A DNA stretch of 64,000 bases, from NCBI GenBank assembly GCA_033442325.1, contig JAWQFM010000027.1, positions 67,844-131,843 of the forward strand. The letters run 5' to 3'. The position numbers were made by a program, and so were the translations under genes. Below the pieces are notes generated by a model that searched no databases, was not told the origin of the DNA, and saw only the letters and a program-made list of their open reading frames with translations. This DNA is from Salpingoeca rosetta (taxonomy: Eukaryota > Protista > Choanoflagellata). Shown here piece after piece: positions 252 through 36,884 of the stretch (its first letter is position 1; each line of letters begins with the position of its first letter).

Positions 252-1364
252 CAATTCACAGCGATGCAAAACACAATGGTGCGAACACAGGGCATGGTTC
301 ATGGTGTCGAGTGCACTGGTGGTAGCACAACCGCAGGATCACCAGCAGTGCAGCACCAGCACACACGTACGTGTGAGGACGGTGATTCTGTATCCTGCAA
401 AGATGCCCTTGATGCCATCATGCGCGATGGTCTGACGAATAACATCAAAAGGACCGCTGTACTGCCGCTTGGCTCCAAACCGCTGCACCTGCGGAGATCA
501 ACACGTGAACACGTGTGTAGATGAGGCAGCAAGAATCGCAAGAGTCGTAAGTGAGACAAACGCATGAGCGAGCGAGAAGGCGATGACAAGACCAGCGCAG
601 CTGAAAGCACACACACGACTGCTGGAAAGTTTTGCACAGGCTCGTTGTGCGCGCGCACACGCACACACTCACTGACTCACGCACACGCACGCACATACAC
701 ACTCACACACACTGACTCACACACGCACACACACGCACACACATACACACACTCTCTCTCACTGACTCACACACACTCACACACACACTGACTCAAACAC
801 ACACACACACACATACACACACACACACAAATCATGCACCTGGAGGCGGCACTTGATCATTTCGACGGGCGCAAGGATGGTGCAGTAGACGGGAGCAGTC
901 ATGACGGCAGCAAGAACCACTTGCGGCATGGAAAGCGCGTCGGGTCTGGTGTCGAAAGCGGTCGCCACCACACGCTTCATAAAGCCGTTGGTGCCGAAGA
1001 GGGCGGCGTTCAACGCACCGGACATGACGATGGGCGGACCAACGCCCTTGTAGAAGCCTCGCAGGCCCTGGAGGAACGTGATGCGTGATGGGTACCGTTG
1101 GGAGAATATGGTCGAACGAGCGAGGGTGAGAGAGGGGCGAGGAGGAGCGACATCAAAACACATAACACACATGCAAGAACCGCCACAAGTACCACAAGTG
1201 TTCTCATAGGTCAGGTCACATGCACGCACCTCTTTCTGTGCCGTCTCTGACATGCAGTGCCATACGCCACGATAGTAGCTGCTACTTTGCATGCGGACCT
1301 GCGGGCACATGGGGGGGGGGGAGACATGACGAATGAGAGGTGCATGTGTGTGTATGCGCGCAAT

Positions 1365-1410
<46 letters not shown>

Positions 1411-1783
1411 AGTGTGGATAATCGATGAGCAATGACATCACCACCACAATCTCACGATCATCGCCATCACACACACACACACTCGCACATAAACACACAC
1501 ACACACACACACACACACACTCGAACATAAACACACACATACAAATACACTCACATACCATCACACACACCATCACACACACCATCACACACACCATCAC
1601 ACACACACACACACCATCACACACCTTCACAGTGTCGAGGGGGTGACCCACAAGGACCTGCAAGATGCCACCGACGGTGCCGCCCAACAGCTCTGCCGCA
1701 AGGCGACCTCCCTTGTCCCCATGGTTGGCCGTTGCGGCCTTTTTCCCATCATCACCCTCCTCCATGCTTATTCTCTCAACCAT
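97..1783 (-). CDS. Mitochondrial carrier (SLC25 family, carnitine/ornithine-carrier-like); spliced, 3' end runs off the window start
   Basis: Exons read GGTVGGILQVLVGHPLDTVK | VRMQSSSYYRGVWHCMSETAQKE | GLRGFYKGVGPP...LAPVEMIKCRLQ | VQRFGAKRQYSGPFDVIRQTIAHDGIKGIFAG | GSPFYFVSYEFVKKQLL. Contains Px[DE]xxK carrier signatures and GT-AG introns. Confidence 0.93.
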
Positions 1784-2177
1784 CTTCCTTCTTGTGAGTG
1801 TGAGCTTCTGATCTGATCTGACAGCTTTGCTTCTTCTGCTTCTGATGGCAGCGCACACGTGTGTATGTGCCGTTATTGGAAGCGTTGCGGCGCGTTGTTG
1901 TGTGCGATCCATTCAAGGCGCGTTGTTGTCTTTTGTGGTTTGCTTTCATATCATCTGAGTCAGCATTTATTTTCAACGGCCAATATCCAAACACCAAAGA
2001 CAACAACAGCACAGGCGCACGCGACAACAGAACAGACACGCGACAAGAAACACACGCGACACAGCCTTTGCTCTCTCTCGCTCTCTCTCACGGTCACCGT
2101 GTCTTCACCCTTTCCCGTGCCTCCCTTCCCACCACACCCACACACGTGCACACATACCACCAAGAGCAGCGGTAACA

Positions 2178-3444
2178 ATGTCTTCCATCTGGGCCAAGGC
2201 CAAGCAGCAGTGGACGTGCACCACGTGCTACTCTGGGAACCCACTGGACGTGAACAAGTGCCGCGCGTGCGAGGCTGCTCGGCCAGGGACAGCCGCAGCA
2301 GATGCCACGAAGAAGCCAGCCTCCGCCACCACAGGCGCGGACGCTGCCGGTGACAACAAGAAGCCTGCGTTCAAGTTTGGCGCAAGCACCAAGGCCGGTG
2401 ATGGCAAAGACGCTACCACCAAGGACGCCAGCAACAACAGCACCGCCACGACGAGCGGCAAGCCAGCCACCACTGGCGGATCCTCCATCTGGGCCAAGGC
2501 CAAGCAGCAGTGGACATGCTCTGCATGCTACTCTGGAAACCCACTGGACGTGGACAAGTGCCGTGCCTGCGAGGCCGCGCGGCCTGGTACCTCTGGTGTG
2601 AAGGAGGCAGCATCTGCCGATGCAAGTGCTGGTGAGACCGCTGCCAAGCCCGCATTCAAGTTTGGTGCCAGCACGAGCAGCACCGCAGGTACGGCTGCGC
2701 CTTCCAGCGGGTTCAAGTTTGGCGCCAGCAAGTCATCATCTACAACGACCCCCGCAACCACTGGCGGCTTTAAGTTTGGCGCCTCTTCATCCACAGCAAC
2801 CACCAAGCCCGCTTCCGGTGCGTTCCAGTGTCCGTCTGTGTAGGTGTGCGGGCGTTCATGTGTGTGTGTGTGTGTGTGTGTGTAGATGTGTGTGTGTGAG
2901 TGTGTGTGTAGATGTGTGTGAGTGTGTGCAGATGTGTGTGTGTGTGTGTAGATGTGTGTCTGTTCCTGTGTCTGTGTGAGCATTGCTTTGCTGCTTGATC
3001 GTGAAGCTGCTTCTTCCCCGCGCACTCCTTCATGGCTGCTGTGACCCATTTCTGCTCACTTGCGGGGTATTGCTGTGATGTTGGTGGCCAGGCGGGTTCA
3101 AGTTTGGAGCAAGCACGAGCACCTCCAAGCCGGCAGCGACGGGCGGCTTCAAGTTTGGAGCCGCAACAGCCAAGGACGAGGAGAAGAAGGGAGAGGACGG
3201 ACAGGAAGAAGACAAGGAAGAAGACAAGGAGGAAGACAAGGGGGAGGAGAAGGAGGAAGACAAGAAGGAAGACAAGGAGGAGGAGAAGGAGGAAGACAAG
3301 AAGCCTGCCACGCGTGCAACCCGCCGCACGACGCGCAGCGCCAAGAAGAAGGCTGAGGAGGAAGGCAGTGCCGAGGACGGTGATGCTGATGCTGATGCTG
3401 ATGCTGACGAGAACCAGCCCAAGAAGCGGGCAAAGCGCACGTGA
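2178..3444 (+). CDS. RanBP2-type zinc finger (x2) protein with FKFG repeats and acidic/basic tail; nucleoporin-like. Exons ~2178-2817 and 3092-3444
   Basis: Two W-x-C-x2-C-x3-N-x6-C-x2-C motifs (WTCTTCYSGNPLDVNKCRAC; WTCSACYSGNPLDVDKCRAC), six FKFG repeats, an E/K/D-rich tail, and a C-terminal PKKRAKRT NLS-like stretch. Confidence 0.85.
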
Positions 3445-3452
3445 GACACGCG

Positions 3453-3490
<38 letters not shown>

Positions 3491-4180
3491 ATCTTCCTTC
3501 TCCTTCTTCTTCTTTTTCCTCTTTTCTGTTCGTGTGGGCACAGCCACGCGATGGGTTGTTGGTTGTGTAGTGGGGGGGGATGATAAGTGACGAGAGGGGG
3601 CGCGGTTGTTGGGGGATGCGATCTGGTGGGCGATGAGGGTGGTAGCTGACTCTGATGATGGGCTGTGTGCTCCCGTGCTTTGACCGCACACATCAACCAG
3701 TAAACAAGACGAACAACACACACGCGCGCGCGCGGAATTTGATGCATCCATGGTTTGCGCCATTAGCAACTGTGGTGATGATGGGCGAAACTGCAAGCTT
3801 TAATCAGGACGCACAGGCAAACCACCACACTACACAGACATGCGTGTGCACAAACCACACGTGTACACGAACACATGCGCACACTTACGCACACACGTGG
3901 ACGAACAATGGCACAAACGACACAGGACGCACAGGACGACTAAGATAGAGCGAGAGGGGGGAGAGAGGAGGGGGCTGTTGGATTGGGTGTGGAGAGTGTG
4001 CACTCAGTTCTTGGAGAGAATGAATGAGAGGAAGAGAATACAGTGGAGGATTGAGACTGAAGCTGCCGTGTCGACAGGTTCATCATGGCTGATAGAGGAA
4101 GAGGGTGTTTGAAGGAGAGGGAGAGGCAAGAGGGGGATTGGGAGGGGAGCGAAGAGCGCCCCCGGGGGGGGGTGCACAGC

Positions 4181-4370
4181 TCAGGAGCGCTGCGGGGCGG
4201 GGGCCATGCCGGGGACGGCGCCCATCTGGGACGATGGCGCACCGCCAGTCAACTGCAGCATACATGGGCGGCGTTGGGGAAGGGGTGTTCAAGGGTGAGC
4301 TGCGGTGAAGCGAGGGGGGAGGAAGGTGTGTGTGTGTGTGTGTGTGCATGTGTGTGTGTATGTGTGTGTG

Positions 4371-4446
<76 letters not shown>

Positions 4447-5308
4447 GGGAACGGCTGCAACATGTGTTGTTGTTGGTGTTGTTGTTGAAGGACGCACCAT
4501 CTGTTGGTGTTGCATGCGGATGCTCTCCGCCTGCTGTGCCTGCATTTGCTCCTGTGGAGAAGGAAACAATCATGTCAGAACAGAAGACACGTGAGAAGCA
4601 AGCCGAAAACGATGCTGAGAGGTCCATGATCACACGTTGAGGTGCACGCATGCAAGTAACCAAGCAAACGGGTGGCCAGCAAAGACTTGCACGCACAACC
4701 CCCTGAACGTATCAAGCACCCGCACAAAACGCAAACACACACACACACGCACAAAACGCAAACACACACACGCATGGAGAGAGAGAGACACACACACACA
4801 CAGACACACACACAGAGACACACACAGAGACACACACAGACACACACACACACAGACACACACACACGCACATACATACACACACACGCTCACACTGACC
4901 TGATCAGACTCGTACTGGGGGATGAGACCGAGGACAAGTGCCGAGGAAGCAAGAATCCAAAGGAGCTTGCCGCCGTAAGTGTATGCGTTCGACACCTGCG
5001 CCACAACAACGCAGCATGGTTGGTGCGGTGAGTGAACATTGAAAGTGAAAGGTGGAAGGGTGGATTGGCAGCAGATACAAGAACGCACCACTGGGAGCAC
5101 ACAGCACACCACTGGGAGCACACATCTGGGAGCAAACAATGCACAACACCTAGCACGCAACAAACAACAGAGCATGCAGCACAGTACGCACGGTCCAAGC
5201 GGTGGTGGAGGCGGCGGAAGAGACCATCTTGCGCACGGGCTCTGGGAACATCTCCTGCAGCGCGGCGACGCGCTCAGCGAACGTCTCGTCCTCAAACTGC
5301 TCAGCCAT
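4181..5308 (-). CDS. TOMM22: Mitochondrial import receptor Tom22 (4 exons)
   Basis: MAEQFEDETFAERVAALQEMFPEPVR matches the Tom22 ETxxERxxxLxEMFP motif. TM segment LLWILASSALVLGLIP, a Q-rich tail, and a last exon LTGGAPSSQMGAVPGMAPAPQRS*. Confidence 0.88.
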
Positions 5309-25091: not shown

Positions 25092-26294
25092 ATGGAGCGT
25101 GCGTCGTTGTTTGCGGTGGTGCTGTGCGCTCTGGCTTGCAGAGCTGCGCTTGCTGTGGACATCCCCGAAGGTACGATTGAGAGACGTGTTGGGTTGTCGT
25201 CGAAGGTGGAGGGAGGTGTGCCATTGTGTGTGTCGGGGGATCCACCGTTGTGTCAGCTCCTGCTATCGGTCATCGGTTGCTTCGTATTTGTGTTTCGGTG
25301 GGAGGACTGCTTTTTGTTTGCGTTTGTTTACAATTGGTGGCCTTGTCTCGTGCCCCTGATGTGTTGTTGCACGTTGCTACGCCCTGCGTGTCTTGCTGGT
25401 TCGCTGATCGCCGATTAGGATGCCAGAGCTGCTCAAAGTCAAGCCCTTGCTACAAGTCTGGCGGGTGCTATCCTCGCATTCGTGAGTTAACGCGTGTCTG
25501 CGACAGCAGCGTTGTTGCCTTGCGCATGCGTCAACTGCGATTGCTCGATCGCGTCACCCGTCTTCCCTGCTGAGCATGCTCTGCTGCTGGGTGTCCACGC
25601 TTGTGTGTTCTGCTCTTTCCTGAGCTCACATTGCCTTTGGTGTTTGACAACAGTCGGCACAAACCCGATGGCATGTGGCGTGGGCCATTTCGATTGCCTG
25701 GATGTTGGTCGAACCGCCGATAAGTTTCCCTTCTGTGCCGGCTGCCAACTTGTCTACCAAGGAGGTGTGGCTGTGTGTGTATGTGCCTGTGTGTGTGTGT
25801 GTGTGTGTGTGTGTTTGTCTATCTGTCTGTGTCTGTGTGTATGTATTTTGCCTCTGTAGTTTTATCTCTCTCTCTCGCCAGGTTTATCTGCCTGTCTTTG
25901 CGTGCGAGCAGCAATCCATCAGCATCGCATGCAAACTGTTATGTTGTGATCGCTCACCGCCATACACACCCCACTACGCCTTGACGTTGCAGGTTCCGTT
26001 GAAAGCAATGGCGCCGTCTCACAGGGCCGCTGCCGGCACGCCGCCGTCTCAAGCGTGAGTTGCCGCTGTGGATGTGCGAATTTGTGCGCCTCCACATGCG
26101 CTTTCACATGCGCGGCGTGCTTTGTACATCTGTGTCTCATATGCATATCTCACACACGTCGCCCGCTTGTTGACGCTACTCGCGTTGTCGCTGTCGCCAC
26201 TCGCCAACCAGCTATGCTTTTCGTGGGATTTTTCCCTGAACACATGCTTCTCTGGCACGAAACCTTGCTTGAGCAACAGTGCACAGCTTGGAGG

Positions 26295-26368
<74 letters not shown>

Positions 26369-26590
26369 GTGTGGTGACTGCCTTGCTGCTTGTGCGCGCT
26401 TGTGATCATGTGCTATCGCCGTTTGCTTCATGCGGTGCACTTGTCAACTGCTCACACGCAAACATCTGCTTGGCTTTGTTGGCTTGGCAGGTTGGCGACA
26501 CAATTCGCTGGACAGTCGTGGGCACCAAACCCCAGACCATCCACTCGCCCCCTAACTCCGAAGGGTTCTACTCAATCGGGTACGCGCACG

Positions 26591-26655
<65 letters not shown>

Positions 26656-27595
26656 ATGAGTATCCGTGTACACGTGGCCTCCGCCCGTTTCTGCAGTGCC
26701 TGACGGTGTGTTTGTCGAGACGCATTTGCGTACACGGCCCCACCCATCGCTGCTCCTGCCGCCCCATTTGCGTGTGCCGCTGCGTCCACCTCACACACGC
26801 GTGGTTTATCGATGGCACCACAGGTCTGGCAAGCTGCCGCCGGGCGCCACGTTCTACTACACGTTCAAGGAGGAGGGCACGTTCACGTACATGTCGCGGT
26901 TGACTGCCGGCCTCGACGGAACAGTGATTGTGACGGATGGCACCACCAGCGCAGCAGCAACAACAGAAGCGGCAACCACCAGCGCAGCAGCAACAACAGA
27001 AGCGGCAACCACCAGCGCAGCAGCAACAACAGAAGCGGCAACCACCAGCGCAGCAGCAACAACAGAAGCAGCAACCACCAGCGCAGCAGCAACAACAGAA
27101 GCAGCAACCACCAGCGCAGCAGCAACAACAGAAGCAGCAACCACCAGCGCAGCAGCAACAACAGAAGCAGCAACCACCAGCGCAGCAGCAACAACAGAAG
27201 CAGCAACCACCAGCGCAGCAGCAACAACAGAAGCAGCAACCACCAGCGCAGCAGCAACAACAGAAGCAGCAACCACCAGCGCAGCAGCAACAACAGAAGC
27301 AGCAACCACCAGCGCAGCAGCAACAACAGAAGCAGCAACCACCAGCGCAGCAGCAACAACAGAAGCAGCAACCACCAGCGCAGCAGCAACAACAGAAGCA
27401 GCAACCACCAGCGCAGCGGCAACAACGACAACAACGACATCATCATCTTCATCGACAACAACAACGACGACGACAATCCTCACGTCTGCACCAACAACAA
27501 CAACAACAACAACAACCACAACAACAACAATCACCGCCACCGCTCTCCCAGCACCCCCCTTTCTGCCATCTACATCCTCCACCACCACCACCACC

Positions 27596-27694
<99 letters not shown>

Positions 27695-27986
27695 GCCCCT
27701 GCTCGCCCCGGCAAGCGCCCTCCGCCTCCGCCCACGTCGTCGTCGTCGTCGACATCTGTACCGGTGACCATCGGCGCTCCCCAGCGGTCTGCATCCGTGG
27801 ACGCCGCATCCGTCGCAGGCAGCGCTGTCGGCGGTCTCGCAGGTACACGCACACGCGCACACGCACACACACACACACACACANNNNNNNNNNNNNNNNN
27901 NNNNNNNNNNNNNNNNNNNNNNNNNNNNNNNNNNNNNNNNNNNNNNNNNNNNNNNNNNNNNNNNNNNNNNNNNNNNNNNNNNNACA

Positions 27987-28085
<99 letters not shown>

Positions 28086-28556
28086 TCACGAACTCGCTTA
28101 CTCACTCGCTCGCCCACTCACCCACTCACCCCCTCGCCCGTACACGCTTTCCACGTCATTCGCCTCTCGGCAGGCATGGTCATCATCATTGCTTTGATTC
28201 TGCTGTTTGTGCGCCGCCGACGTAACTCAGCCAACGCAGGTCTGTCACCCCATGCACCTCATGTACCCATGTACCTCATGCACCTCCAAGTCCACCCCCA
28301 TCCCAGTTGGATCGATGTGTGGTTGTGTTCCCTTGTCTTTTTGGTGCCAATCACCTCAACGCCTCATCTATGTGCATATCCCAACACCGCCGCCCATCGC
28401 GGTTGCCTGCATATACGACAGCTGGCAAGAGCAAGGTGCCAGCCCCGCCATCACGTGGGGCGCAGCGACCGGCAAACCACGTCGGCCAATACATGGTCCC
28501 CGTCTCAAACATGTTCCTGCCAGACTACGAAGAGCCAGATGCCATCAGGTGTGTGT

Positions 28557-28588
<32 letters not shown>

Positions 28589-29668
28589 TTGTCTCTGTGT
28601 GTGTGTGTGTCTGTGTGTGTCTGTGTGTGTGTGTGTGTGTGTGTCTGTATGTCTGTGTCTGTCTCCCGTCGTTTGCTTTCTGTCCTTCTGTCTGTCTACG
28701 TTTGTCTTTTTGTTTCTGTTTGTGTGCCCGCGTCTGTCTGCCGTGTCAAGCCTCCCCCCCCCTTCCCCCGGTCCTGCTCACATGTCCCATTGTGGTGTTC
28801 GCTCGCCAGCCCAAACCGGGTGTACGAGCTGCCGATGCACACGGGAAAGACGGCGCCACCGGCCTACGCAACAGCAGCAGCAGTCAGCGTCGCCCGCACC
28901 AAGACCGCCCTGTACGACGTGGGCGATGGCGGCGATGGTCAGGCCATCTACGACAACGCTGTGGAGGAGGACGTGCAGGGCTTTGGGGTCCCACTCTACG
29001 ACAGGGCATCGCAACAACAGCCGCCGCAGAAGCAAACCCAGGGCGCACCGCTCTATGATGTCGCATCACAACAGCAGCAGCAGAACACGGCTCCGCTGTA
29101 TGACATTGCAACCACCGTGACGCCACAACAGCAGCACGAACAGCTGCGAGGGTTTGATGTCCCCTTGTACGATGTCGCTTCGCAACAGCAGCAGACGCAG
29201 CGGCGTGCAGGCGCGCTTGCTGTCGACGTGACGTACGACAACCCAACAGCCAAGTCCCTGGCCAACGTTGGCAATGATGAAGATGAGGAGGAGAAGGACG
29301 GTGCAAAGGCACGAGCCAACGCCCCCACCTACGATATGGCCTCACCAATGCCAGCGCACTATGCGGAGAACCCGCGCCACCGCGCCCTGCACCCATCGTA
29401 CGACGTGGCCACGTCCGAGACAGACGGCGGTGGCGACGACGACCTCTACGCCACAGCGGCTGACGTTGCGCACAGCGACAAGAACACGCACCAGCAAGCA
29501 GCGGCCACGGACAAGAACACGGACCCCGATGGTGGATATCTGATTACGTTCCCCTCCTCCTCGCAAACGCCCTCGCGGCAGCAGCGGCCGCCTACCCTGC
29601 CCACCTCCACCACGTACGACAACATTGGCGATGACGGCGAGGCGCTGTACTCTGCACCAACACTCTGA
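25092..29668 (+). CDS. Type I membrane receptor-like protein A: signal peptide, Cys-rich small exons, cupredoxin-like domain, Thr/Ala mucin stalk, TM, Tyr-rich cytoplasmic tail
   Basis: Signal MERASLFAVVLCALACRAALA. VGDTIRWT...H...SGKLPPGATFYYTFKEEGTFTY...GTVIV. TM VAGSAVGGLAG|MVIIIALILLFVRRRR. Tail has about 18 Tyr, 10 of them in YD motifs. Some internal exon boundaries are uncertain. Confidence 0.85.
26942..27420 (+). repeat. Coding 33-bp tandem repeat (~14.5 copies, TTSAAATTEAA); a separate (ACA)n poly-Thr tract follows at ~27600-27692
   Basis: Unit accaccagcgcagcagcaacaacagaagcagca is repeated nearly perfectly without spacers. Confidence 0.95.
27884..27983. other. Assembly gap (100 N) inside a (CA)n intron tract
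   Basis: Run of N. Confidence 1.
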
Positions 29669-30606
29669 CGATGACGCAGCGACAAGCACGCCGCATTGGA
29701 GCATTTCCTCTTGCCTGTGCCTCGCTCTCTCGTTGGATTTTACATTACCGTCTTTCTGTTTTTTCCTCTGGTTTTGTTGCTCCTTTTCCTTGCTTGTTAT
29801 TTGACTTTTGGTTCATCCTCATCCACGCGCAAGCGAGATGCATGAACATCGTTGTTCTGTTGTTACTTGGGTTTCTTCTTCCCCTCCCGTGCAAGTTCAA
29901 CACACTGCTCCTGGCTTGTTTTGTCCTTGAATGGGGGGACTCCATGCATTTGTGTTCGCCATGATTCCTGCTGTTACGTGACAACGTTATGTGAAGTTCT
30001 TCTTGATTTGATGCTGTCCCTCACTAACAGTCTTCTTCTTCTTTTCAAGCACGAAGGCATCCTTCCTTCAGTCCCAACTCCTTCCTAATGCCAGTGCTTC
30101 CTTGCTTGTTTTGCTTCTTTGCTGTTGTTGTTCCTGCCTTCCACAAGCAAGCAACAGCTGTCGTTCCTGGAGTCGCTGGTCGCCTTGAACACCTTCATTT
30201 GCTGCTTGTTCGCTTCATTCATTCATACAAGCTGATGAGTGGTGCCAACCAAAGGCAAAGGAAAGCAACAACAACCCACAACAACCCACACGCACACACG
30301 CCCAGACCCACACTCGTCTCATGCTGCTGAAATTTAATGGAAAACATTCATCATTCCTCGTGCCTCGCCCCTCGCCTTTGAAGTCCTTTTTGCTTGCGTG
30401 GGTGCGTGCGTGTGCGTGCGTGCGGGTGGGTGAGGATTGGACGAGCGACAAGACTCTTAAGACTGTGACAGGACCGTCGCAAGACTGTGACAAGGCTGTG
30501 ACAAGAGTGACAAGAGCCGGCAAAGGGAGAAGGAGGAGGAGTCCTGCAACAAAAGCAAACAGGCCCGCGCAACAAGGGAACAGAAGAACAGTCATTTACT
30601 TTAGTC

Positions 30607-31096
30607 ATGGCGGTGCTGCCGCTTGCCGCCATCCACGCGGTGACGCTGGTGGCAGTTGCGTCCTCGCTCTTGTTCGTGAGCCAGTTCCCGTACCACTGCA
30701 TTGCTGGCAGCCCAGGCATAGTACCAGGGTACCAGTCTCCACCAGATCTGACAGAGGCAGAGGTGACTGGCGTGCCCCTGGACTACCTCGACGCAAGCTT
30801 GGATGCGCCCGCGCCCCTCGTCAACTTCAAAGAGTTCTCTGAGGTGCATGTGTGTGTGCGTATGCGTGTGTGCGTATGCGTGTGTGCGCGTGAAAGTGCG
30901 CGTAGCTCCTGGTTTTCGTTGCCTGCAAGCACGCAAGAGCAATACAACCACACAAAAATTGCGAGCACAAGAGCTTGCTCCCTAACTCACTCTCTCACTC
31001 ACTCACTCACTCACACACACACACACACTCACACACACACACACACAGCTTGCTCACTAACTCACTCACTCACTCACTCACACACACACACACACA

Positions 31097-31153
<57 letters not shown>

Positions 31154-34100
31154 CCACACACACACACACACCTACACACCCACACACTCTCTCTCTCACA
31201 CACACACACACCTACCCACTCACACACACACGCTCTCTCTCTCTCTCGCACACACACTCACTCACACACGCTCACTCACTCATGCACACTCACCCACTCA
31301 CTCTCAATCTCACTACAGGAGTTTGCACTCGAAGTGCAGTTTGCGCAGCAAGAATACCAGCTCATGACACTCCGCACAGCCACAATGCTGCAGATGCTGG
31401 TGGCTTCCATTGAATTTGAGCTCCTGGTCAAGAACGGTTATGAGCCTCGCCCAGACACGCCCACCCAAGCGCCCGAGCTCAGGCACGTCGGGCGGGCCCT
31501 GGCCCTCGGCTCTGCAGACAAGCCCTCCTCAGCCAGCGCAGATGTCCTGGCCGAGATTGCAGAGTACGCTAGGGAGGTCGGGTTCGAGTTCATTTCCATC
31601 CCTGACAACATTGAGACAGACAACTACGTCTATGTCAGCACCGTGCAGGCAGACTGCCGCGACCACGCCGCAGACGTGCTCTTCATCTTGGACAGCAGCG
31701 GCGACGTTGACCAAGACTTCTCCCAACTTCGGTCGTACGCCGTGCAAACCGCCTCCCGCTTCGACATCAGCCCTTCCCAGACCCGCATCGCCTTCATGAC
31801 ATACGCAACCACGCCCTCGCGCCTGTACACGTTGAACGCTGCGGAATTCCTTTCCGCAGACGAGCTGTTGGCCCATGCTGCTACGGAGAACTTTCGAGGG
31901 GGTGAGTACGAGTGGAGCGCTGAGGCTGCTGCTCTGCGATGCTGCTTCATGGTGTCTGGGTGTGCTGTACCTCAGCTTTCTCCTTTTGTACACTATTCAA
32001 CCATCGTTTTCGTCTTTTGGCTGTGGCCGCGGCTGTCAGGTTGCAACGCGCACGCGACTACGCTCCAATCTTCTCTCACTTCCTCACCTTCCACGCACAC
32101 CCCTGACGGCCTTCAGGTTTCACCAACACCGGGGCGGCTCTGGCTGCTGCACGACAGGCGGTATTCGGCGAAAAATATGGAGTGAGTGTCATCTCGGATG
32201 TTCGGCGAGCTGTGAGCCCTGAGTTATTGCGGTGCGCGGTTGCGGTTGTTGTTACTGTTAGTGTGATGATGATGAACTTGCTGCAGGTTGAAGACGGAGG
32301 CAGGGTTGATTTGCGGTTGCTTGGTTGCAATCTCGCAGCAGCTACAGAGCAACGACTCACTCTCATTCATCACCCGCACACGCACACGCACACGCACACG
32401 CACACACGCGTGCAATGCAACACAGATGCGCCCTGCGTACCTGGGCATTCCCCGCATTGCAGTGCTGTTCGTGAGTCACTCGGCCCATGACAGCTTCATC
32501 GCGCCTGCACGCCAGCTCCGCGAGCACGGAGTCACCGTCATCGTTGTTGGTATGGCGATGCCCACTTGCGTCTTGGTCTTCGGCTTGCGTATTACCCTTT
32601 AGTGCACATGCAAGCTTGCAGTGCACCTACTTGTTCAGATGTCTGCCTGCCCCACGTTATCTTGCAGGTCATGAGTGCACCACCACGGCCTTCAGCTCTC
32701 TCTCTCCTTCTCTCTCTCTCTATGTCTCCCTGTCTGTCTTGCTTGCTTGATCTCTTGTTCTCTGTCTGTGGTTGAGAGAGGTTCTCACCAATCCTTCCAA
32801 CCACGTGTATGCACGTGTGACAACAGGGACGGGGAGTGTGTCGACGAACGAGATGGCGCTGATTGCCAGCGAACCCGTCAGCGAAAATGTCATCCGCATC
32901 GGCGACGTTCCAAAGTTTGTGGTGCTGCCCCAGTTGGTGGCGGCCACCATGTGCAGGCAGCCAGTCATTGTCGACACAGCCAATGCGGTGAGTAGCAGCA
33001 TGAGAGGCGGGGTTGCTTGTGTGGGGTTGTCCCTGTAGTGCTCTGTGTGTATGTGTGATCTGTGTGTATGTGTGATCTGTGTGTATGTGTGCTCTGTGTA
33101 CGTGCTTATGTGTGTGCTCTGTGTGTATATGTGTACGTGTGTGATCTGTGTATGTGTGTGTGTGTGTGTGTGCCTGACCGACTGTCTGCCTGACTGTCTG
33201 CCTGAGCTTGTGCGCATCACGTCGCGTTTGTTCCGTCATGGCTCATGTGCCTTGCACCATCGCCCACCACATCACAACACTGCCTTCCTTCTCATGGATG
33301 CTTCACGACACCAGGTGCTGGTCCGTGGTTTGCCACCACGGGCGTTTCGCTTCTACCGCCTCAATCCCATGTTCAAGCGGCTGCAGCGCATCAACTTCTT
33401 CATGGAAATGTTCAGCGGCCAGACGTGAGCCTATCGAGCGCGTGTCCACTCTGATGTCTTGGCCTTGTTACACTGCGTACCTTGCATGCACGCACGCACG
33501 CACATTCGCACAGATGCATGCCAGTAGATTCCCAAGCTCATTCACCGCACGCACACACAACACGCCACACACAACACGCTACACACAACACGCTACACAC
33601 CACACACACACACACACGCACACACACACACACTCACTGACGCTGCGTTCATACATACGCACCGTTTTACCAGGGACGTGTTTGTGTCGATGAACGGAAC
33701 GCTTGTTGGGCCATATCACCACGACATAGCGTACACGACACGCGAGACTGCCAAAGCGTTTTCCATTGCCAACTTCTCTTCATTTGATGCTGTCACGTTC
33801 GCTGTGCAGGGGCGCCCCACCTCGCTCATCACCGCTGCGTCGTTTCGCCTCAACCTCGTCAACGCCATGTTCACCGGTGGACCCGTACATGCGGTCTCGC
33901 TGCCCTTCACTGCTGCCCGTCCGGGAAAGACCGTGTCGCTACCTCCTTTGGAGGCGACAGGGGAGAGCGCGGTTGGCACAGCGGTGACGCTGCTGCTTCA
34001 GGGATTTGACAACACGACGTTCATTGTCACCGCAGGTGGACAGCGCGTGCGGCTGACACAGTACATCATGCTTGGGGACTCACACCGCACGCTCGTGCTG

Positions 34101-34689
34101 GGGCGGAACATGTCGGATCCACTTAACATTGGCGGTGTGCTGCTGCAGGTGATGAGCGCACAGATCACGACGATGACAACCACAGTGACAACCACAGTGA
34201 CAACCACAGTGACAACCACAGTGACAACCACCACCACCACCACAACGTCAGTCGCAACAACTACAACAACAACAACAACGACCACCACTTCGACTGTCGG
34301 GGGTCCAGCAACAGTGCCTTCAACTACGACTACGAGCGATACGCCGCTGCCACCCACCACGTCACCAGCACCGCCAATGCAGCAGGGGCCGCAGGGCACA
34401 ACCACAATCACAACCACAACCACAACCACAACCACAACCACAACCACAACAACGATGTTTACCACGACTACAACAACGACGACGGTATTCACCGCCACCA
34501 CAACTGCTGCCACCAGCACGACAACTACCACAAACGGAGCAAGGCATACAATCAACCCAACTACCGCCACTTTGCACGCCACAAGCGCAGCCATTACACC
34601 ATCAATCCCATTAACGACTGCCACAAGCACCACCGTCGCCACTACGACACCAAGTACCCCTGTGCCAAGTACAACAGCTACCCCATCAA

Positions 34690-34729
<40 letters not shown>

Positions 34730-35460
34730 GCCACTGTTTGCTGGTGGTCGGCAGTCATCATCGTCAGTGGATACAGCGACGGTTGCGGGCAGCGCTGCAG
34801 GCGGCTTTGCTGGTGCGTGAGTGAGAGAGAGAGAGAGTGTGTGTGTGTGTGTGAGTGTGGGGTTTTATTGGGGAAAACTCGCTGAAATCTTACACTGCTC
34901 CCAGCGCTCAGAGATGGGGAAGGCAATTGCGGCAAAACAAAAGGGCAGCGGTGTGTGTGTGTTCACACTTGTGTCGCTCATTGGCAACCCTCCTCTCGAG
35001 TACAGCAGCTGACATGTGTCGATCACCCCCCCCTCTCTTCTCTCCACTCCTATATTTGTGGGTCACTAAGAATCGGGTTCGGATGTTACCACAGACAATA
35101 TGCAGTGCAAAGAAACGCTTACAGCACAAAGGTCGCGCAGAACGCGCGAGTCTTACTCCGAATGTAATATACGTATCTGGGTACATTAAAGCCGCTTATG
35201 CACGCAAGATCAGCCTGTGGGTACGATATGCGGAGTAAATAAGTGGATAGGAATCCACTATATTTCGAATAACAGTCCATGGGGGAGTCGATAGAGAGAT
35301 GTGCGAGGTGATTGTGGTGCCGTCCCGCAAAACCTTATCTGCTATTTAGAGTACTTACATGGACATCCATTGCTATCTCGTATAACTAGCGCCCTTGCCG
35401 CTCGGACGTCGGTGCTGCCCTCCGGCCTTGATAAATATTCCAATTTGTTACGTTCGTCGT

Positions 35461-35535
<75 letters not shown>

Positions 35536-36108
35536 ACGGATGTGCGTCATTTGTTCGTCATTTCCTCTCCACCTCTTGCCATCCCCCACTCCTCACCCCC
35601 ACACTCCTTTTTATCCCCCACCTACACCCACATCACATATATGCGTTCTCTGTCATGGCGGCCACGCAGGGACGGTGTGGAGTATGAGGTACCGCGATCA
35701 TTTGGACACGTGACAGGGGCCGTGCAGATGGGTGAGCCCGTGAAGATCAACCACACACGCGCTGTCATGTATGACATAGGCAATGACGGCAGCCCAAACT
35801 ACGACATGCCCTCCTCATTGCAAACAACACACGCGCCAACAGCAGCAGCAGCAGCGAGGAAAACAGCCCACGGCGTACGCATGGCCATGCTTCAGGATGT
35901 TGGCGAATCGGGGACCGACACCACCACAGCTGCCACTGCCGGCAACGGCAGGCCCACATATGAGGAGGTGGGCGTCACCGAGACGGCAAATGATAATGAG
36001 GAGGTGTTGGGCTTTGCTTCGCTGTCCACAACAAGCACAACGGCACCCAGCTCAACCGGTTATGACAACATTGGTGACGATGGACAAGTGGTGTACGCTT
36101 CACCGTAG
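30607..36108 (+). CDS. Receptor-like protein B: signal peptide, VWA domain, beta-rich region, Thr-rich stalk, Tyr-motif tail. The TM exon could not be found (see findings)
   Basis: ADVLFILDSSGDV...SRFDISPSQTRIAFMTY...GFTNTGAALAAARQAVF...PRIAVLF...LREHGVTVIVVG...EMALIASEP is a VWA pattern. Stalk ends SVDTATVAGSAAGGFAG. Last exon 35670-36108 ends GYDNIGDDGQVVYASP*. Confidence 0.8.
35051..35460. other. Compositionally anomalous ~410 bp block of unknown origin interrupting receptor B
   Basis: About 47% GC and ~35 TpA dinucleotides (hand count), no microsatellites, and no credible exon. Unlike the surrounding TpA-poor sequence. Confidence 0.65.
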
Positions 36109-36884
36109 ACGGTGGCGTGGTGTTGCTGCGCGTTACTGCTGCCCACACGGTGCTGCTGCTCGTCGTTCCGTTACTGTTGCGTCGAGCGAAGATGACTGTG
36201 TCATCTGTGTGTGCAGAATGTGTGTGCATCGTGTGTTGTGTGTGTGTGTGATTGTTTGCCTCTGTGTGTGTGCATGGTGTGTGTGTATGTGACTGTTTGC
36301 CCCTGTGTATATGGTTGCGATTGTTTGTGCCTGTGTGCATGTGCGTTTCTTCATTCCATCGTTCACCTCCATGAGACACACCTGGCCGTTCCCCTCCTCT
36401 CCGCCCTTCGCCCAAACCCTTCCACCACGCCCGCCTACGTTTCTCTTCACAATAGACACATCGTTCTCGATCAATGCTCGGGATTTTGCTGCTCATTGCA
36501 CGTGGAGACGGTGCTGCGTGCGCGGGCGTGTGATTGAGGGTCGCACACGCACACTTGAACAGCGACAGTCACGAAATGTCAAGAAGGATGCGTGGTGCCA
36601 GGCACAATGCAAGACGAAGACGCAGAGCAAACGAGTGGCAGCGTGCACACGAGCCTGCCTGGCACACAGGTAACAAACACGAGGTAACAAACACAACACA
36701 ACACCAAGCAAAGTAGAGCGCACATCGTTTGAAGCGATGCCACGGACAACAGCACACATTTGCATCACGACACTGTTGTGTCACAACCAGCATGAAACAT
36801 GGCAAGATGTCAGAACAACGACTTCACAACACACCCACACACTCTCACTCACACCATCAGCCCGGGTGACGTCGTGTCCGGCAA

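What the first reader, a model, noticed from the sequence alone, without database searches (positions are those of the whole stretch)
25092..36108. Tandem kinase-less receptor pair: different ectodomains (cupredoxin-like vs VWA) on a shared stalk/juxtamembrane/Tyr-tail chassis
Seen: two adjacent same-strand genes have unrelated N-terminal domains but share a Thr-rich stalk and a homologous membrane entry (SVDAASVAGSAVGGLAG vs SVDTATVAGSAAGGFAG) cut by a phase-1 intron at the same point. Both have a phase-2 last exon starting VYELP vs EYEVP, an EEDVQGF vs EEVLGF motif, and a near-identical C-terminus. Neither tail has a catalytic domain. Known: choanoflagellates have large tyrosine kinase and SH2 repertoires. 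Inference: this is a modular receptor family in which exon-shuffled sensor domains plug into one phosphotyrosine signalling tail, analogous to animal non-catalytic tyrosine-phosphorylated immunoreceptors.
Basis: partly seen in the sequence, partly recalled or inferred. Interest (0 to 1): 0.8.

Follow-up and report, generated by a model that had tools for sequence, protein, structure and literature searches.

The report
Two kinase-less tyrosine-tail surface proteins
Two neighbouring genes of the choanoflagellate Salpingoeca rosetta encode mucin-stalked surface proteins with different outer domains and a shared, anciently duplicated membrane-entry and tyrosine-rich tail; a similar kind is already published for this species, and an assembly error hides part of the second gene.

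Summary
The core observation holds. Window = S. rosetta GL832989.1.

**Gene 1 (25092-29668)** can be spliced, all GT-AG, into an 824-aa type I protein:
- signal peptide and Cys-rich region
- a weakly cupredoxin-like domain without copper ligands
- a Thr-rich stalk, a TM segment and a 337-aa tail with 18 Tyr

**Gene 2 (30607-36108)** has a VWA ectodomain.

**Shared parts.** The membrane entry (12/16 identical, same phase-1 intron) and the tail exons are homologous (Smith-Waterman z = 15). Synonymous sites are saturated. The entry and the C-terminal YDNIGDDGxxxYxxP are under purifying selection.

**Corrections**
- The N gap lies in gene 1's intron. NCBI splits the gene there, and continuity was not tested with reads.
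- Gene 2's TM-core and juxtamembrane exons are absent from the assembly. About 440 bp there has no support in any run. RNA reads place a missing juxtamembrane-like exon before the tail exon.
- The tail exon is expressed 10-20x above the VWA exons, so the join is unproven.
- An exhaustive search found no further relatives.
- The stalk-ectodomain junction lies inside one exon, so this is not exon shuffling.
- The motif fails the ITAM definition.

**Context.** Kinase-less S. rosetta membrane proteins with YxxP tails are published (PMC5043372). This scan noted similar receptors elsewhere in this genome. Phosphorylation is untested.

The parts
25092..25170 (+). Gene 1 exon 1: start codon and signal peptide (hydrophobic core, KD19 2.26)
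   Evidence: predicted from sequence only, not in the NCBI model (which starts at 25668)
25419..26054 (+). Gene 1 exons 2-4 (25419-25481, 25654-25764, 25993-26054): Cys-rich extracellular region, no family match
26491..26935 (+). Gene 1 cupredoxin-like domain (exon 5 26491-26579 plus start of exon 6 from 26824); copper ligands Cys/His/Met replaced
   Evidence: plastocyanin 1bxu E 0.025 and other cupredoxins for the second half; negative
26936..27793 (+). Gene 1 Thr/Ala/Ser-rich stalk (45% Thr), including 14.7 near-perfect 33-nt repeats (26942-27426) and (ACA)33
27794..27842 (+). Gene 1 membrane entry (SVDAASVAGSAVGGLA+G), exon ends in phase 1
27843..28173 (+). Gene 1 intron 6 holding the N gap 27884-27983 between (AC)n runs; continuity not tested with reads
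28174..28239 (+). Gene 1 TM-core exon (MVIIIALILLFV then RRRR stop-transfer); NCBI starts PTSG_13003 here
28422..28548 (+). Gene 1 juxtamembrane exon (ends ..PDYEEPDAI, phase 2)
   Evidence: same splice in PTSG_13003
28810..29668 (+). Gene 1 tail exon: most of the tail's 18 Tyr, most as Y-D/E; four PLYD(V/I/R)A(S/T) repeats; C-terminal YDNIGDDGEALYSAPTL (29615-29668)
30607..30843 (+). Gene 2 exon 1: start and signal peptide
   Evidence: (RNA contig)
31319..32987 (+). Gene 2 exons 2-5: helical N-terminal part and VWA domain
   Evidence: PF00092 E 2.5e-10 and 0.013; splice joints
33315..34160 (+). Gene 2 exon 6 and first part of exon 7: unassigned beta-rich region, PPC-like only as a weak lead
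   Evidence: no Pfam; feature score 0.89, lead only
34161..34763 (+). Gene 2 Thr-rich stalk (49% Thr)
34764..34812 (+). Gene 2 membrane entry (SVDTATVAGSAAGGFA+G), exon ends in phase 1
34813..35669 (+). Assembled 'intron' where gene 2's TM-core and juxtamembrane exons should lie but do not. 34831-35027 resembles a highly expressed sequence from elsewhere. 35028-35463 has no read support and foreign composition. 35464-35534 is (GT)35.
35670..36108 (+). Gene 2 tail exon (phase 2): 6 Tyr; C-terminal YDNIGDDGQVVYASP (36061-36108). Expressed. In RNA it is preceded by an exon absent from the window.

Best explanation
These are two old tandem paralogues in Salpingoeca rosetta. Each encodes a type I, mucin-stalked surface glycoprotein with no enzymatic domain. 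The outer domains differ. Gene 1 has a Cys-rich region plus a copper-site-less cupredoxin-like domain. Gene 2 has a VWA domain plus an unassigned beta-rich region.

Shown here: the stalk end / membrane entry and the C-terminal tail exon descend from one ancestor, and both are kept by selection.

Inferred, not shown: the disordered tail works as a multi-site phosphotyrosine docking platform. When the ectodomain is engaged or clustered, cytoplasmic tyrosine kinases would phosphorylate the Y-D/E sites. SH2 adaptors would then bind them. The conserved YxxP sites (YELP/YEVP, and the C-terminal YSAP/YASP) fit Crk-type SH2 domains. YDN fits Grb2-type SH2 domains.

Gene 2's TM-core and juxtamembrane exons most likely exist in the real genome. 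They were probably lost to a local misassembly.
For: **Paralogy**
- Membrane entry 12/16 identical, with the same phase-1 intron.
- Tails score SW 135 vs 38 +/- 6 for shuffles (z = 15).
- C-terminus 10/15 identical.

**Old duplication with constraint**
- pS is 0.58-0.77, i.e. saturated.
- pN is only 0.14 over the C-terminal 15 codons and 0.12 over the entry, against 0.43 over the rest of the aligned tail.

**Topology**
- Both have signal peptides.
- Joining gene 1's exons 6 and 7 gives the strongest hydrophobic window in the protein (KD 2.88), followed by RRRR.

**No catalytic or folded tail domain**
- Pfam finds nothing.
- The ESM Atlas model of PTSG_13003 has pLDDT 0.35.

**Tyr context**
- Y[DE]: 12 of 18 and 5 of 6 (shuffle P <= 2e-4).
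- YxxP: 5 and 3 (P = 0.018 and 0.002).
- YxxPhi is not enriched.

**Gene 2 is alive**
- Exons 1-7 are spliced in an RNA contig.
- The tail exon is expressed.
- 17 RNA reads carry, just before 35670, 30 letters that occur nowhere in the window. They read in frame as ..QYEAFGATS(T), which resembles gene 1's ..DYEEPDAI(S) and has the same phase-2 junction.
- 35028-35463 has zero depth in all four runs, including a DNA-like one. Its TA dinucleotide frequency is about 5x the window mean.

**Precedent**
- S. rosetta membrane proteins PTSG_05573/12435/12436 have cytosolic YxxP repeats. Their pYDVP peptides bind a choanoflagellate Crk SH2 in ITC (PMC5043372).
- SH2 preferences (Crk pYxxP, Grb2 pYxN) are established knowledge, not tested here.
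Against: - No phosphorylation data exist for these proteins. The one S. rosetta pTyr paper found has no site list, and PTSG_13003 is not in its supplements.
- Most Tyr sites are YD(V/I/M)(A/G), not YxxP or YxN, so their reader is unknown.
- The tail exon of gene 2 is 10-20x more abundant in RNA than its VWA exons in three studies (X19, X4, X5). DNA depth is equal. Most tail transcripts may therefore lack the ectodomain.
- No read or contig links exon 7 to the missing exons.
- One RNA contig joins 35017 to 35670 with an in-frame stop just before the joint.
- Gene 1's two halves are separate genes in the NCBI annotation. The link across the gap is only inferred.
- No relatives exist beyond the pair, so conservation across species cannot be used.
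Confidence: 0.5

Rival explanations
1. These are adhesion or matrix-binding mucin-type surface proteins. Their tails carry sorting and endocytosis signals or cytoskeletal anchors, not phosphotyrosine signals. The conserved C-terminal YDNI followed by an acidic GDDG would be a YxxPhi / acidic-cluster trafficking signal.
For: - YDNI fits YxxPhi, sits beside acidic residues, and is the best conserved element.
- VWA domains and mucin stalks are typical of adhesion proteins.
- There is no phosphorylation evidence.
Against: - YxxPhi is not enriched. It occurs at 1 of 18 Tyr in gene 1, where shuffles give a mean of 2.6.
- Y[DE] and YxxP are strongly enriched instead.
- The second conserved Tyr is YxxP.
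- 18 Tyr are far more than a sorting signal needs.
Confidence: 0.22
2. The tail exon at 35670-36108 is not, or not mainly, part of the VWA gene. It would belong to a separate transcription unit. That could be an internal promoter, or a further gene whose 5' exons lie in sequence missing from the assembly. In that case the pair on one chassis is not what the cell makes.
For: - RNA depth steps from about 0.2-2.6 on the VWA exons to 12-23 on the tail exon in X19. The contig depths are 21 vs 373 in X4 and 2-6 vs 104 in X5. DNA-like depth is flat.
- Coverage falls, rather than rises, from 5' to 3' along the ectodomain exons.
- The sequence between 35017 and 35544 is wrong in the assembly, and its true length is unknown.
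- An X4 contig joins 35017 to 35670 with a stop before the joint.
Against: - Exon 7 ends with half a TM segment in phase 1, exactly as in gene 1, so it needs a TM-core exon.
- The spacing from entry to tail exon (857 nt) is close to gene 1's (968 nt).
- The tail exon is single copy in DNA.
- NCBI models one gene from 30607 to 36108.
- The read-borne upstream exon resembles a juxtamembrane exon, not a 5' end.
Confidence: 0.2
3. This is an ITAM-like immunoreceptor module. The YDNI-x7-YxxP pair would be doubly phosphorylated and read by a tandem-SH2 (Syk-like) kinase.
For: The spacing of 7 residues between the two Tyr motifs is conserved in both paralogues, and the block is under purifying selection.
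Against: The second half-site has Pro at +3 in both genes, not Leu or Ile. This fails the ITAM consensus and is itself conserved. No tandem-SH2 partner was examined.
Confidence: 0.06
4. The similarity is chance or compositional, from low-complexity Ala/Gly/Thr/Asp-rich sequence.
For: The stalks and parts of the tails are low complexity. A global MAFFT alignment and the local alignment place some blocks differently.
Against: - 0 of 1000-5000 composition-preserving shuffles reach the observed scores (z = 9-15).
- Intron positions and phases are identical.
- 22 of 39 identical residues use different codons, as expected for old homology under selection.
Confidence: 0.02

Closest known systems
S. 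rosetta YxxP-repeat transmembrane proteins PTSG_05573, PTSG_12435 and PTSG_12436 (Shigeno-Nakazawa et al. 2016, Sci Rep 6:34349; PMC5043372)
   Same: - Same species.
- Single-pass membrane proteins with varied ectodomains (DUF5011; C2 with or without EGF).
- No kinase domain, and several cytosolic Tyr motifs with Asp at +1 (pYDVP).
- Consecutive gene numbers (12435/12436) suggest adjacent genes, as here.
- Proposed as docking sites for Crk SH2, with ITC binding shown for two peptides.
   Different: - No detectable sequence relationship to PTSG_13003 at library-wide significance. Their sequences were not fetched, so no direct comparison was made.
- Here most sites are YD(V/I/M)(A/G) rather than YDVP.
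- The ectodomains differ (cupredoxin-like, VWA).
- PTSG_05573 carries SH2-like domains, which these tails lack.
- The conserved C-terminal YDNIGDDGxxxYxxP block is specific to this pair.
BCAR1/p130Cas substrate domain
   Same: A disordered array of many Tyr with acidic +1 residues (YDxP), phosphorylated by Src and read by Crk and Nck SH2 domains. Function depends on having many sites (PMC5043372).
   Different: Cas is cytosolic, with SH3 and FAT-like domains. It has 15 YxxP motifs. The proteins here are membrane proteins with only 3-5 YxxP motifs.
Animal non-catalytic tyrosine-phosphorylated receptors (ITAM/ITIM receptors) and transmembrane adaptors (LAT, PAG, SCIMP); vaccinia A36
   Same: A membrane protein without an enzyme domain whose tail tyrosines recruit SH2 proteins. 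Feature-space neighbours of PTSG_13003 include SCIMP and A36R clusters (scores 0.79-0.83, leads only).
   Different: - Not homologous.
- The ITAM consensus is not met.
- No juxtamembrane Cys palmitoylation motif.
- The ectodomains are large, unlike those of transmembrane adaptors.
VWA-domain and plastocyanin-type cupredoxin domain families (ectodomains)
   Same: Gene 2 matches PF00092. The second half of gene 1's domain aligns to the C-terminal strands of plastocyanin.
   Different: - Gene 1 lacks the Cys, His and Met copper ligands in that alignment.
- Gene 2's metal-site motif reads DSSGD rather than DxSxS (read from the sequence).

Membership tests
ITAM-bearing immunoreceptor tails | Two YxxL/I half-sites | tested here: not met
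   The first site, YDNI, fits. The second is YSAP (gene 1) or YASP (gene 2), with Pro at +3 in both.
ITAM-bearing immunoreceptor tails | Spacing of 6-8 residues between half-sites | tested here: met
   7 residues (GDDGEAL / GDDGQVV) in both.
ITAM-bearing immunoreceptor tails | Dual phosphorylation read by a tandem-SH2 kinase | not testable with these tools
   No phosphosite data were found.
Pre-metazoan YxxP-repeat transmembrane proteins (PMC5043372) | Predicted transmembrane protein | tested here: inconclusive
   Gene 1 has a full TM segment only if exons 6 and 7 are joined across the gap (KD 2.88). Gene 2's TM-core exon is missing from the assembly.
Pre-metazoan YxxP-repeat transmembrane proteins (PMC5043372) | Several YxxP motifs in the cytosolic region | tested here: met
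   5 in gene 1 (shuffle mean 1.65, P = 0.018) and 3 in gene 2's tail exon (P = 0.002).
Pre-metazoan YxxP-repeat transmembrane proteins (PMC5043372) | Phosphopeptides bind Crk SH2 | not testable with these tools
   This needs ITC or a pull-down.
Pre-metazoan YxxP-repeat transmembrane proteins (PMC5043372) | Sequence relationship to PTSG_05573/12435/12436 | tested here: not met
   phmmer of PTSG_13003 against 1.84 billion representatives found only itself at E <= 0.001. A weak motif-level relationship would be missed.
VWA domain (PF00092) | Profile match above the gathering score | tested here: met
   Exon 2 piece scores 41.3 bits against a cut-off of 23.8, E = 2.5e-10. The exon 4 piece continues the profile. 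The NCBI model also carries PF00092.
VWA domain (PF00092) | Intact MIDAS motif DxSxS | tested here: inconclusive
   The sequence reads DSSGD, with Asp at the fifth position (translation). No structure was made.
Cupredoxin (plastocyanin-like) domain | Recognisable sequence or fold match | tested here: inconclusive
   The second half-domain hits plastocyanin 1bxu at E = 0.025, plus nitrite reductase and ascorbate oxidase. The first half and Pfam find nothing. The domain is split by an intron and could not be folded by reference.
Cupredoxin (plastocyanin-like) domain | Type 1 copper ligands (His, Cys, His, Met) | tested here: not met
   In the 1bxu alignment, Cys is replaced (YMS), the His lies in a 2-residue deletion, and Met is replaced by Leu.

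The most novel reading that the evidence does not exclude
The conserved C-terminal block YDNIGDDGxxxYxxP could be a pre-metazoan two-site signalling switch, functionally like an ITAM but with its own code: a Grb2-type pYxN next to a Crk-type pYxxP. Recombination within Thr-codon stalk repeats could then attach it to different ligand-binding ectodomains. That would give choanoflagellates a kinase-less receptor system that evolved independently of animal immunoreceptors.
Probability: 0.1. Interest if true: 0.75.

Novelty: new member of a known kind. Interest (0 to 1): 0.35.

Why it matters
Choanoflagellates have very large tyrosine-kinase and SH2 repertoires but few known substrates or receptor-proximal docking sites. 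This pair adds two candidate kinase-less surface receptors. Their short C-terminal motif is selectively maintained and can be tested directly with phosphopeptide binding, phosphoproteomics or Tyr-to-Phe editing.

The pair also shows that the reference assembly and annotation hide such genes. One is split at a gap. The other has lost its TM exons to a block of sequence with no read support. Proteome-wide censuses of S. rosetta receptors are therefore likely to undercount this class.

The concept itself is already in the literature (PMC5043372), and similar genes recur in this genome. The value here is incremental.

Tried and rejected
- **Word-index protein searches** with gene 2's tail and gene 1's cupredoxin-like exon found nothing. 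The length limits of the tool apply. I therefore never obtained an id for either full spliced protein. I could not fold the ectodomains or run Pfam on whole proteins. I did not type long spliced sequences into tools.\n- **Exhaustive phmmer** with PTSG_13003 found only itself. A short motif of about 30 bits cannot reach significance in 1.8 billion sequences, so this does not exclude weak motif-level kin such as gene 2 itself.\n- **The read-borne 21-mer** was searched for in the window with up to 3 mismatches. There were no matches.\n- **Candidate exons in 34813-35669** (phase 1 in, phase 2 out) were enumerated. None encodes a hydrophobic TM core.\n- **Origin of the unsupported block 35028-35545** was looked for in plasmids, E. 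coli genomes and phages (blastn), and with two exact 21-23-mers in GTDB genomes. Nothing matched.\n- **Rfam** gave only a far sub-threshold MIR2646 match inside a microsatellite (37 bits against a gathering score of 245). I rejected it as spurious.\n- **Whole-window repeat finder** was swamped by microsatellites and was uninformative.\n- **Phosphosite evidence.** The p38/sorafenib paper has no site list, and its supplements do not name PTSG_13003.\n- **search of earlier findings by sequence** was blank.


Full report
**Identity and gene models.** The window is Salpingoeca rosetta scaffold GL832989.1 (GCA_000188695.1). A locus fetched from that record is letter-identical to window 18176-39668.

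On the + strand I built two gene models from open frames and GT-AG sites.

Gene 1 has nine exons: 25092-25170, 25419-25481, 25654-25764, 25993-26054, 26491-26579, 26824-27842, 28174-28239, 28422-28548 and 28810-29668. It reads through as 824 aa, in this order:
- a signal peptide
- a Cys-rich region
- a small beta domain
- a 283-residue stalk (45% Thr, 28% Ala)
- a hydrophobic segment followed by RRRR
- a 337-residue tail

The last three exons are spliced exactly as in NCBI's PTSG_13003 (349 aa).

Gene 2 has seven ectodomain/stalk exons: 30607-30843, 31319-31901, 32117-32181, 32426-32549, 32827-32987, 33315-33424 and 33674-34812. It also has a tail exon at 35670-36108. NCBI models 30607-36108 as one 776-aa VWA protein.

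**The assembly gap.** The N run 27884-27983 lies inside gene 1's intron 6 (27843-28173), flanked by (AC)n runs on both sides. It therefore cannot break a reading frame.
- Exon 6 ends one base into a Gly codon and exon 7 supplies the other two.
- The join (..AVGGLAG|MVIIIALILLFV) gives the most hydrophobic 19-residue window in the protein, Kyte-Doolittle 2.88. The 12 hydrophobic residues of PTSG_13003 alone are too few to span a membrane.
- Gene 2's exon 7 ends at the homologous position in the same phase.

This is strong indirect evidence for one gene. It is not a test of physical continuity, and a symmetric exon hidden in the gap cannot be excluded. NCBI annotates the two sides as separate genes (386 aa at 25668-27767, and PTSG_13003).

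**Is the shared chassis real?** Yes, for two pieces.
- *Membrane entry.* The entries are 12/16 identical. Local alignment of the last 20-40 residues before the intron scores z = 9.2-11.5, with 0 of 1000-5000 composition-preserving shuffles as high.
- *Tail exons.* They give a Smith-Waterman score of 135 against 38.3 +/- 6.4 for shuffles (z = 15, 0 of 1000). The whole gene 2 tail aligns to roughly the last 140 residues of gene 1's. BLASTP gives E = 3e-5 for the C-terminus (10/15 identical, YDNIGDDG invariant) and 0.002 for the exon starts.
- *Age and selection.* Of 39 identical aligned residues, 22 use different codons. Synonymous sites are saturated (pS 0.58-0.77). Non-synonymous divergence is 0.14 in the C-terminal 15 codons and 0.12 in the entry, against 0.43 for the aligned tail as a whole. 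The duplication is therefore old, and these two short blocks are held by purifying selection in both copies.

The Thr-rich stalks share composition only. The EEDVQGF and EEVLGF pair is not aligned by the optimal alignment. Gene 1's extra tail length is an internal expansion of PLYD(V/I/R)A(S/T)-Q-rich units.

**Gene 2 is not intact in the assembly.** Between 34813 and 35669 no candidate exon with the required phases encodes a hydrophobic core. Splicing 34812 directly to 35670 shifts the frame and stops after five codons.

I laid reads and contigs of four runs on 30300-36200. They show:
- (a) An RNA contig (X4) joins exons 1-7 at exactly the modelled GT..AG sites.
- (b) The tail exon is expressed with the orientation of a + strand RNA.
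- (c) 17 raw RNA reads (X19) carry 30 letters immediately before 35670 that occur nowhere in the window, even with 3 mismatches. They are open only in the tail's frame and read ..QYEAFGATS(T)|DGVEYEVP. Gene 1 has ..PDYEEPDAI(S)|PNRVYELP with the same phase-2 junction.
- (d) Positions 35028-35543 have essentially zero depth in every run, including the DNA-like X1. X1 covers both flanks at 18-25x. The block 35113-35412 has 9 TA dinucleotides per 100 bases against 1.66 for the window. It matches nothing in the plasmid, E. coli, phage or GTDB collections.

The simplest reading is a local misassembly, bounded by a C-run and a (GT)35 run. It would have replaced the stretch that holds gene 2's TM-core and juxtamembrane exons.

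**An open problem.**
- RNA depth is about 0.2-2.6 on the VWA exons and 12-23 on the tail exon in X19.
- The corresponding contig depths are 21 vs 373 (X4) and 2-6 vs 104 (X5).
- DNA-like depth is flat. Within the ectodomain, coverage falls from 5' to 3', so simple 3' bias does not explain the step.
- One X4 contig joins 35017 to 35670, with a stop two codons before the joint in the tail's frame.
- Positions 34831-35027 attract enormous depth with variant positions and divergent continuations. This is the signature of a highly expressed look-alike elsewhere, mostly in the opposite orientation.

No read links exon 7 to the missing exons. Whether the VWA ectodomain and this tail are made as one protein is therefore likely, given the architecture, the spacing (857 vs 968 nt in gene 1) and single-copy DNA. 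It is unproven.

**Ectodomains.**
- *Gene 2.* It carries a VWA domain (PF00092, E = 2.5e-10 on exon 2, continued on exon 4). Its metal-site motif reads DSSGD rather than DxSxS. The following roughly 280 residues have no Pfam match. A language-model neighbour search points weakly to PPC-type beta-sandwiches (0.89, lead only).
- *Gene 1.* The 'cupredoxin-like' label rests on the second half-domain. A 42-residue piece hits plastocyanin 1bxu (E = 0.025), and four of the other six weak hits are cupredoxins. In the alignment the Cys, His and Met copper ligands are replaced or deleted. The first half and Pfam find nothing. The domain is split by an intron, so I could not fold it by reference.

**The tails.**
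- There is no Pfam domain. The ESM Atlas model of PTSG_13003 has pLDDT 0.35. No relative turned up in an exhaustive phmmer of 1.84 billion representatives, nor in the word search.
- Tyr makes up 5.3% of gene 1's tail against 1.5% of its ectodomain, and 4.1% against 2.1% in gene 2.
- Tyr is followed by Asp or Glu at 12 of 18 sites and 5 of 6 sites (shuffle means 2.4 and 0.8; P <= 2e-4).
- YxxP occurs 5 and 3 times (P = 0.018 and 0.002).
- YxxPhi is not enriched.
- Three YxxP positions stand out. One sits in gene 1's juxtamembrane exon (YEEP; gene 2's RNA-borne exon reads YEAF there). The other two are shared by both genes: the exon start (YELP/YEVP) and the C-terminus (YSAP/YASP). YDN precedes the last one in both.

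By established SH2 preferences, pYxxP suits Crk, Nck and Abl-type domains and pYxN suits Grb2-type domains. This is my knowledge, not tested here.

**Comparison with what is known.** Shigeno-Nakazawa et al. 2016 (PMC5043372) described S. rosetta membrane proteins PTSG_05573, 12435 and 12436.
- They have varied ectodomains, no kinase and several cytosolic YxxP motifs.
- Two pYDVP peptides bind the Monosiga brevicollis Crk SH2 domain.
- BLASTP found no orthologues of these genes in other pre-metazoans.

The kind, a kinase-less membrane protein with a multi-tyrosine docking tail, apparently occurring as neighbouring genes and lineage-restricted, is therefore published. This scan's notes list many further 'kinase-less receptor' candidates in this genome (unchecked AI notes). 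One of them is a C2+EGF tandem pair that probably corresponds to PTSG_12435/12436.

The present pair is a new member of that kind, with its own ectodomains and its own conserved C-terminal block. It is not an ITAM: the second half-site has Pro at +3 in both copies. It is not a transmembrane adaptor of the LAT/SCIMP type either, because the ectodomains are large and there is no juxtamembrane Cys.

'Exon shuffling' is not supported. The last ectodomain module, the stalk and the membrane entry share one exon in both genes. A swap, if that is what happened, would have occurred inside coding sequence. Recombination within Thr-codon repeats is a possibility that I cannot test.

**Mechanism and verdict.**
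- *Shown:* old paralogy of the entry and tail, selection on two short blocks, no catalytic domain, a non-random Tyr context, expression of both parts of gene 2, and a faulty assembly between them.
- *Inferred:* type I topology, O-glycosylated stalks, tail phosphorylation by cytoplasmic tyrosine kinases, and docking of SH2 adaptors.

I put the docking-platform reading at about 0.5. A trafficking or adhesion-only tail is at about 0.2. A tail exon largely uncoupled from the VWA ectodomain is also at about 0.2; this overlaps with either function.

The finding is real but ordinary for this genome. Novelty: new member of a known kind. Interest: 0.35.

Noticed in passing
window 35028-35463: This block has zero depth in all four runs laid, including a DNA-like one that covers both flanks. 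Its TA dinucleotide frequency is about 5x the window mean. It matches nothing in the plasmid, E. coli, phage or GTDB collections. It is probably a misassembled or foreign fill in the reference, bounded by a C-run and (GT)35.
   Followed up: partly
window 34831-35027: RNA depth here is enormous (X4 contig depth about 38,000; X19 about 150 plus 44). There are variant positions (34903 A>G, 34911 G>A, 34939 1-nt deletion), and reads diverge after 34922 and 34953. This marks a look-alike of a highly expressed sequence elsewhere in the genome, mostly in the opposite orientation to gene 2. Rfam finds nothing there.
   Followed up: partly
window 35017 > 35670: One RNA-like contig (X4, depth 373) joins 35017 to the tail exon at GT..AG, with an in-frame stop two codons before the joint. 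No X19 read shows this joint. It may be an alternative 5' exon or promoter for a tail-only transcript, or an assembly-graph artefact.
   Followed up: partly
window 26942-27426 and 27596-27694: Gene 1's stalk holds 14.7 copies of a 33-nt unit at 99% identity, and a perfect (ACA)33 encoding 33 Thr. The array expanded very recently and its length is probably polymorphic.
   Followed up: no
window 25668-27767, 28176-29668, 30607-36108: The NCBI models look faulty here. Gene 1 is split at the gap into a 386-aa model without a signal peptide and PTSG_13003, which starts in mid-TM. The 776-aa gene 2 model must bridge an out-of-frame join, because my exons sum to 806 + 146 residues.
   Followed up: partly
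window 30848-30888: 16 RNA reads and one X4 contig 'go back 30' within a 14-nt tandem repeat in gene 2's intron 1. 17 reads carry unlike letters before 30863. This could be a copy-number difference from the reference or reads from another locus.
   Followed up: no
window 30849-31047 (-): An Rfam MIR2646 match at 37 bits against a gathering score of 245 lies in a CA/CT microsatellite. I judged it spurious.
   Followed up: yes
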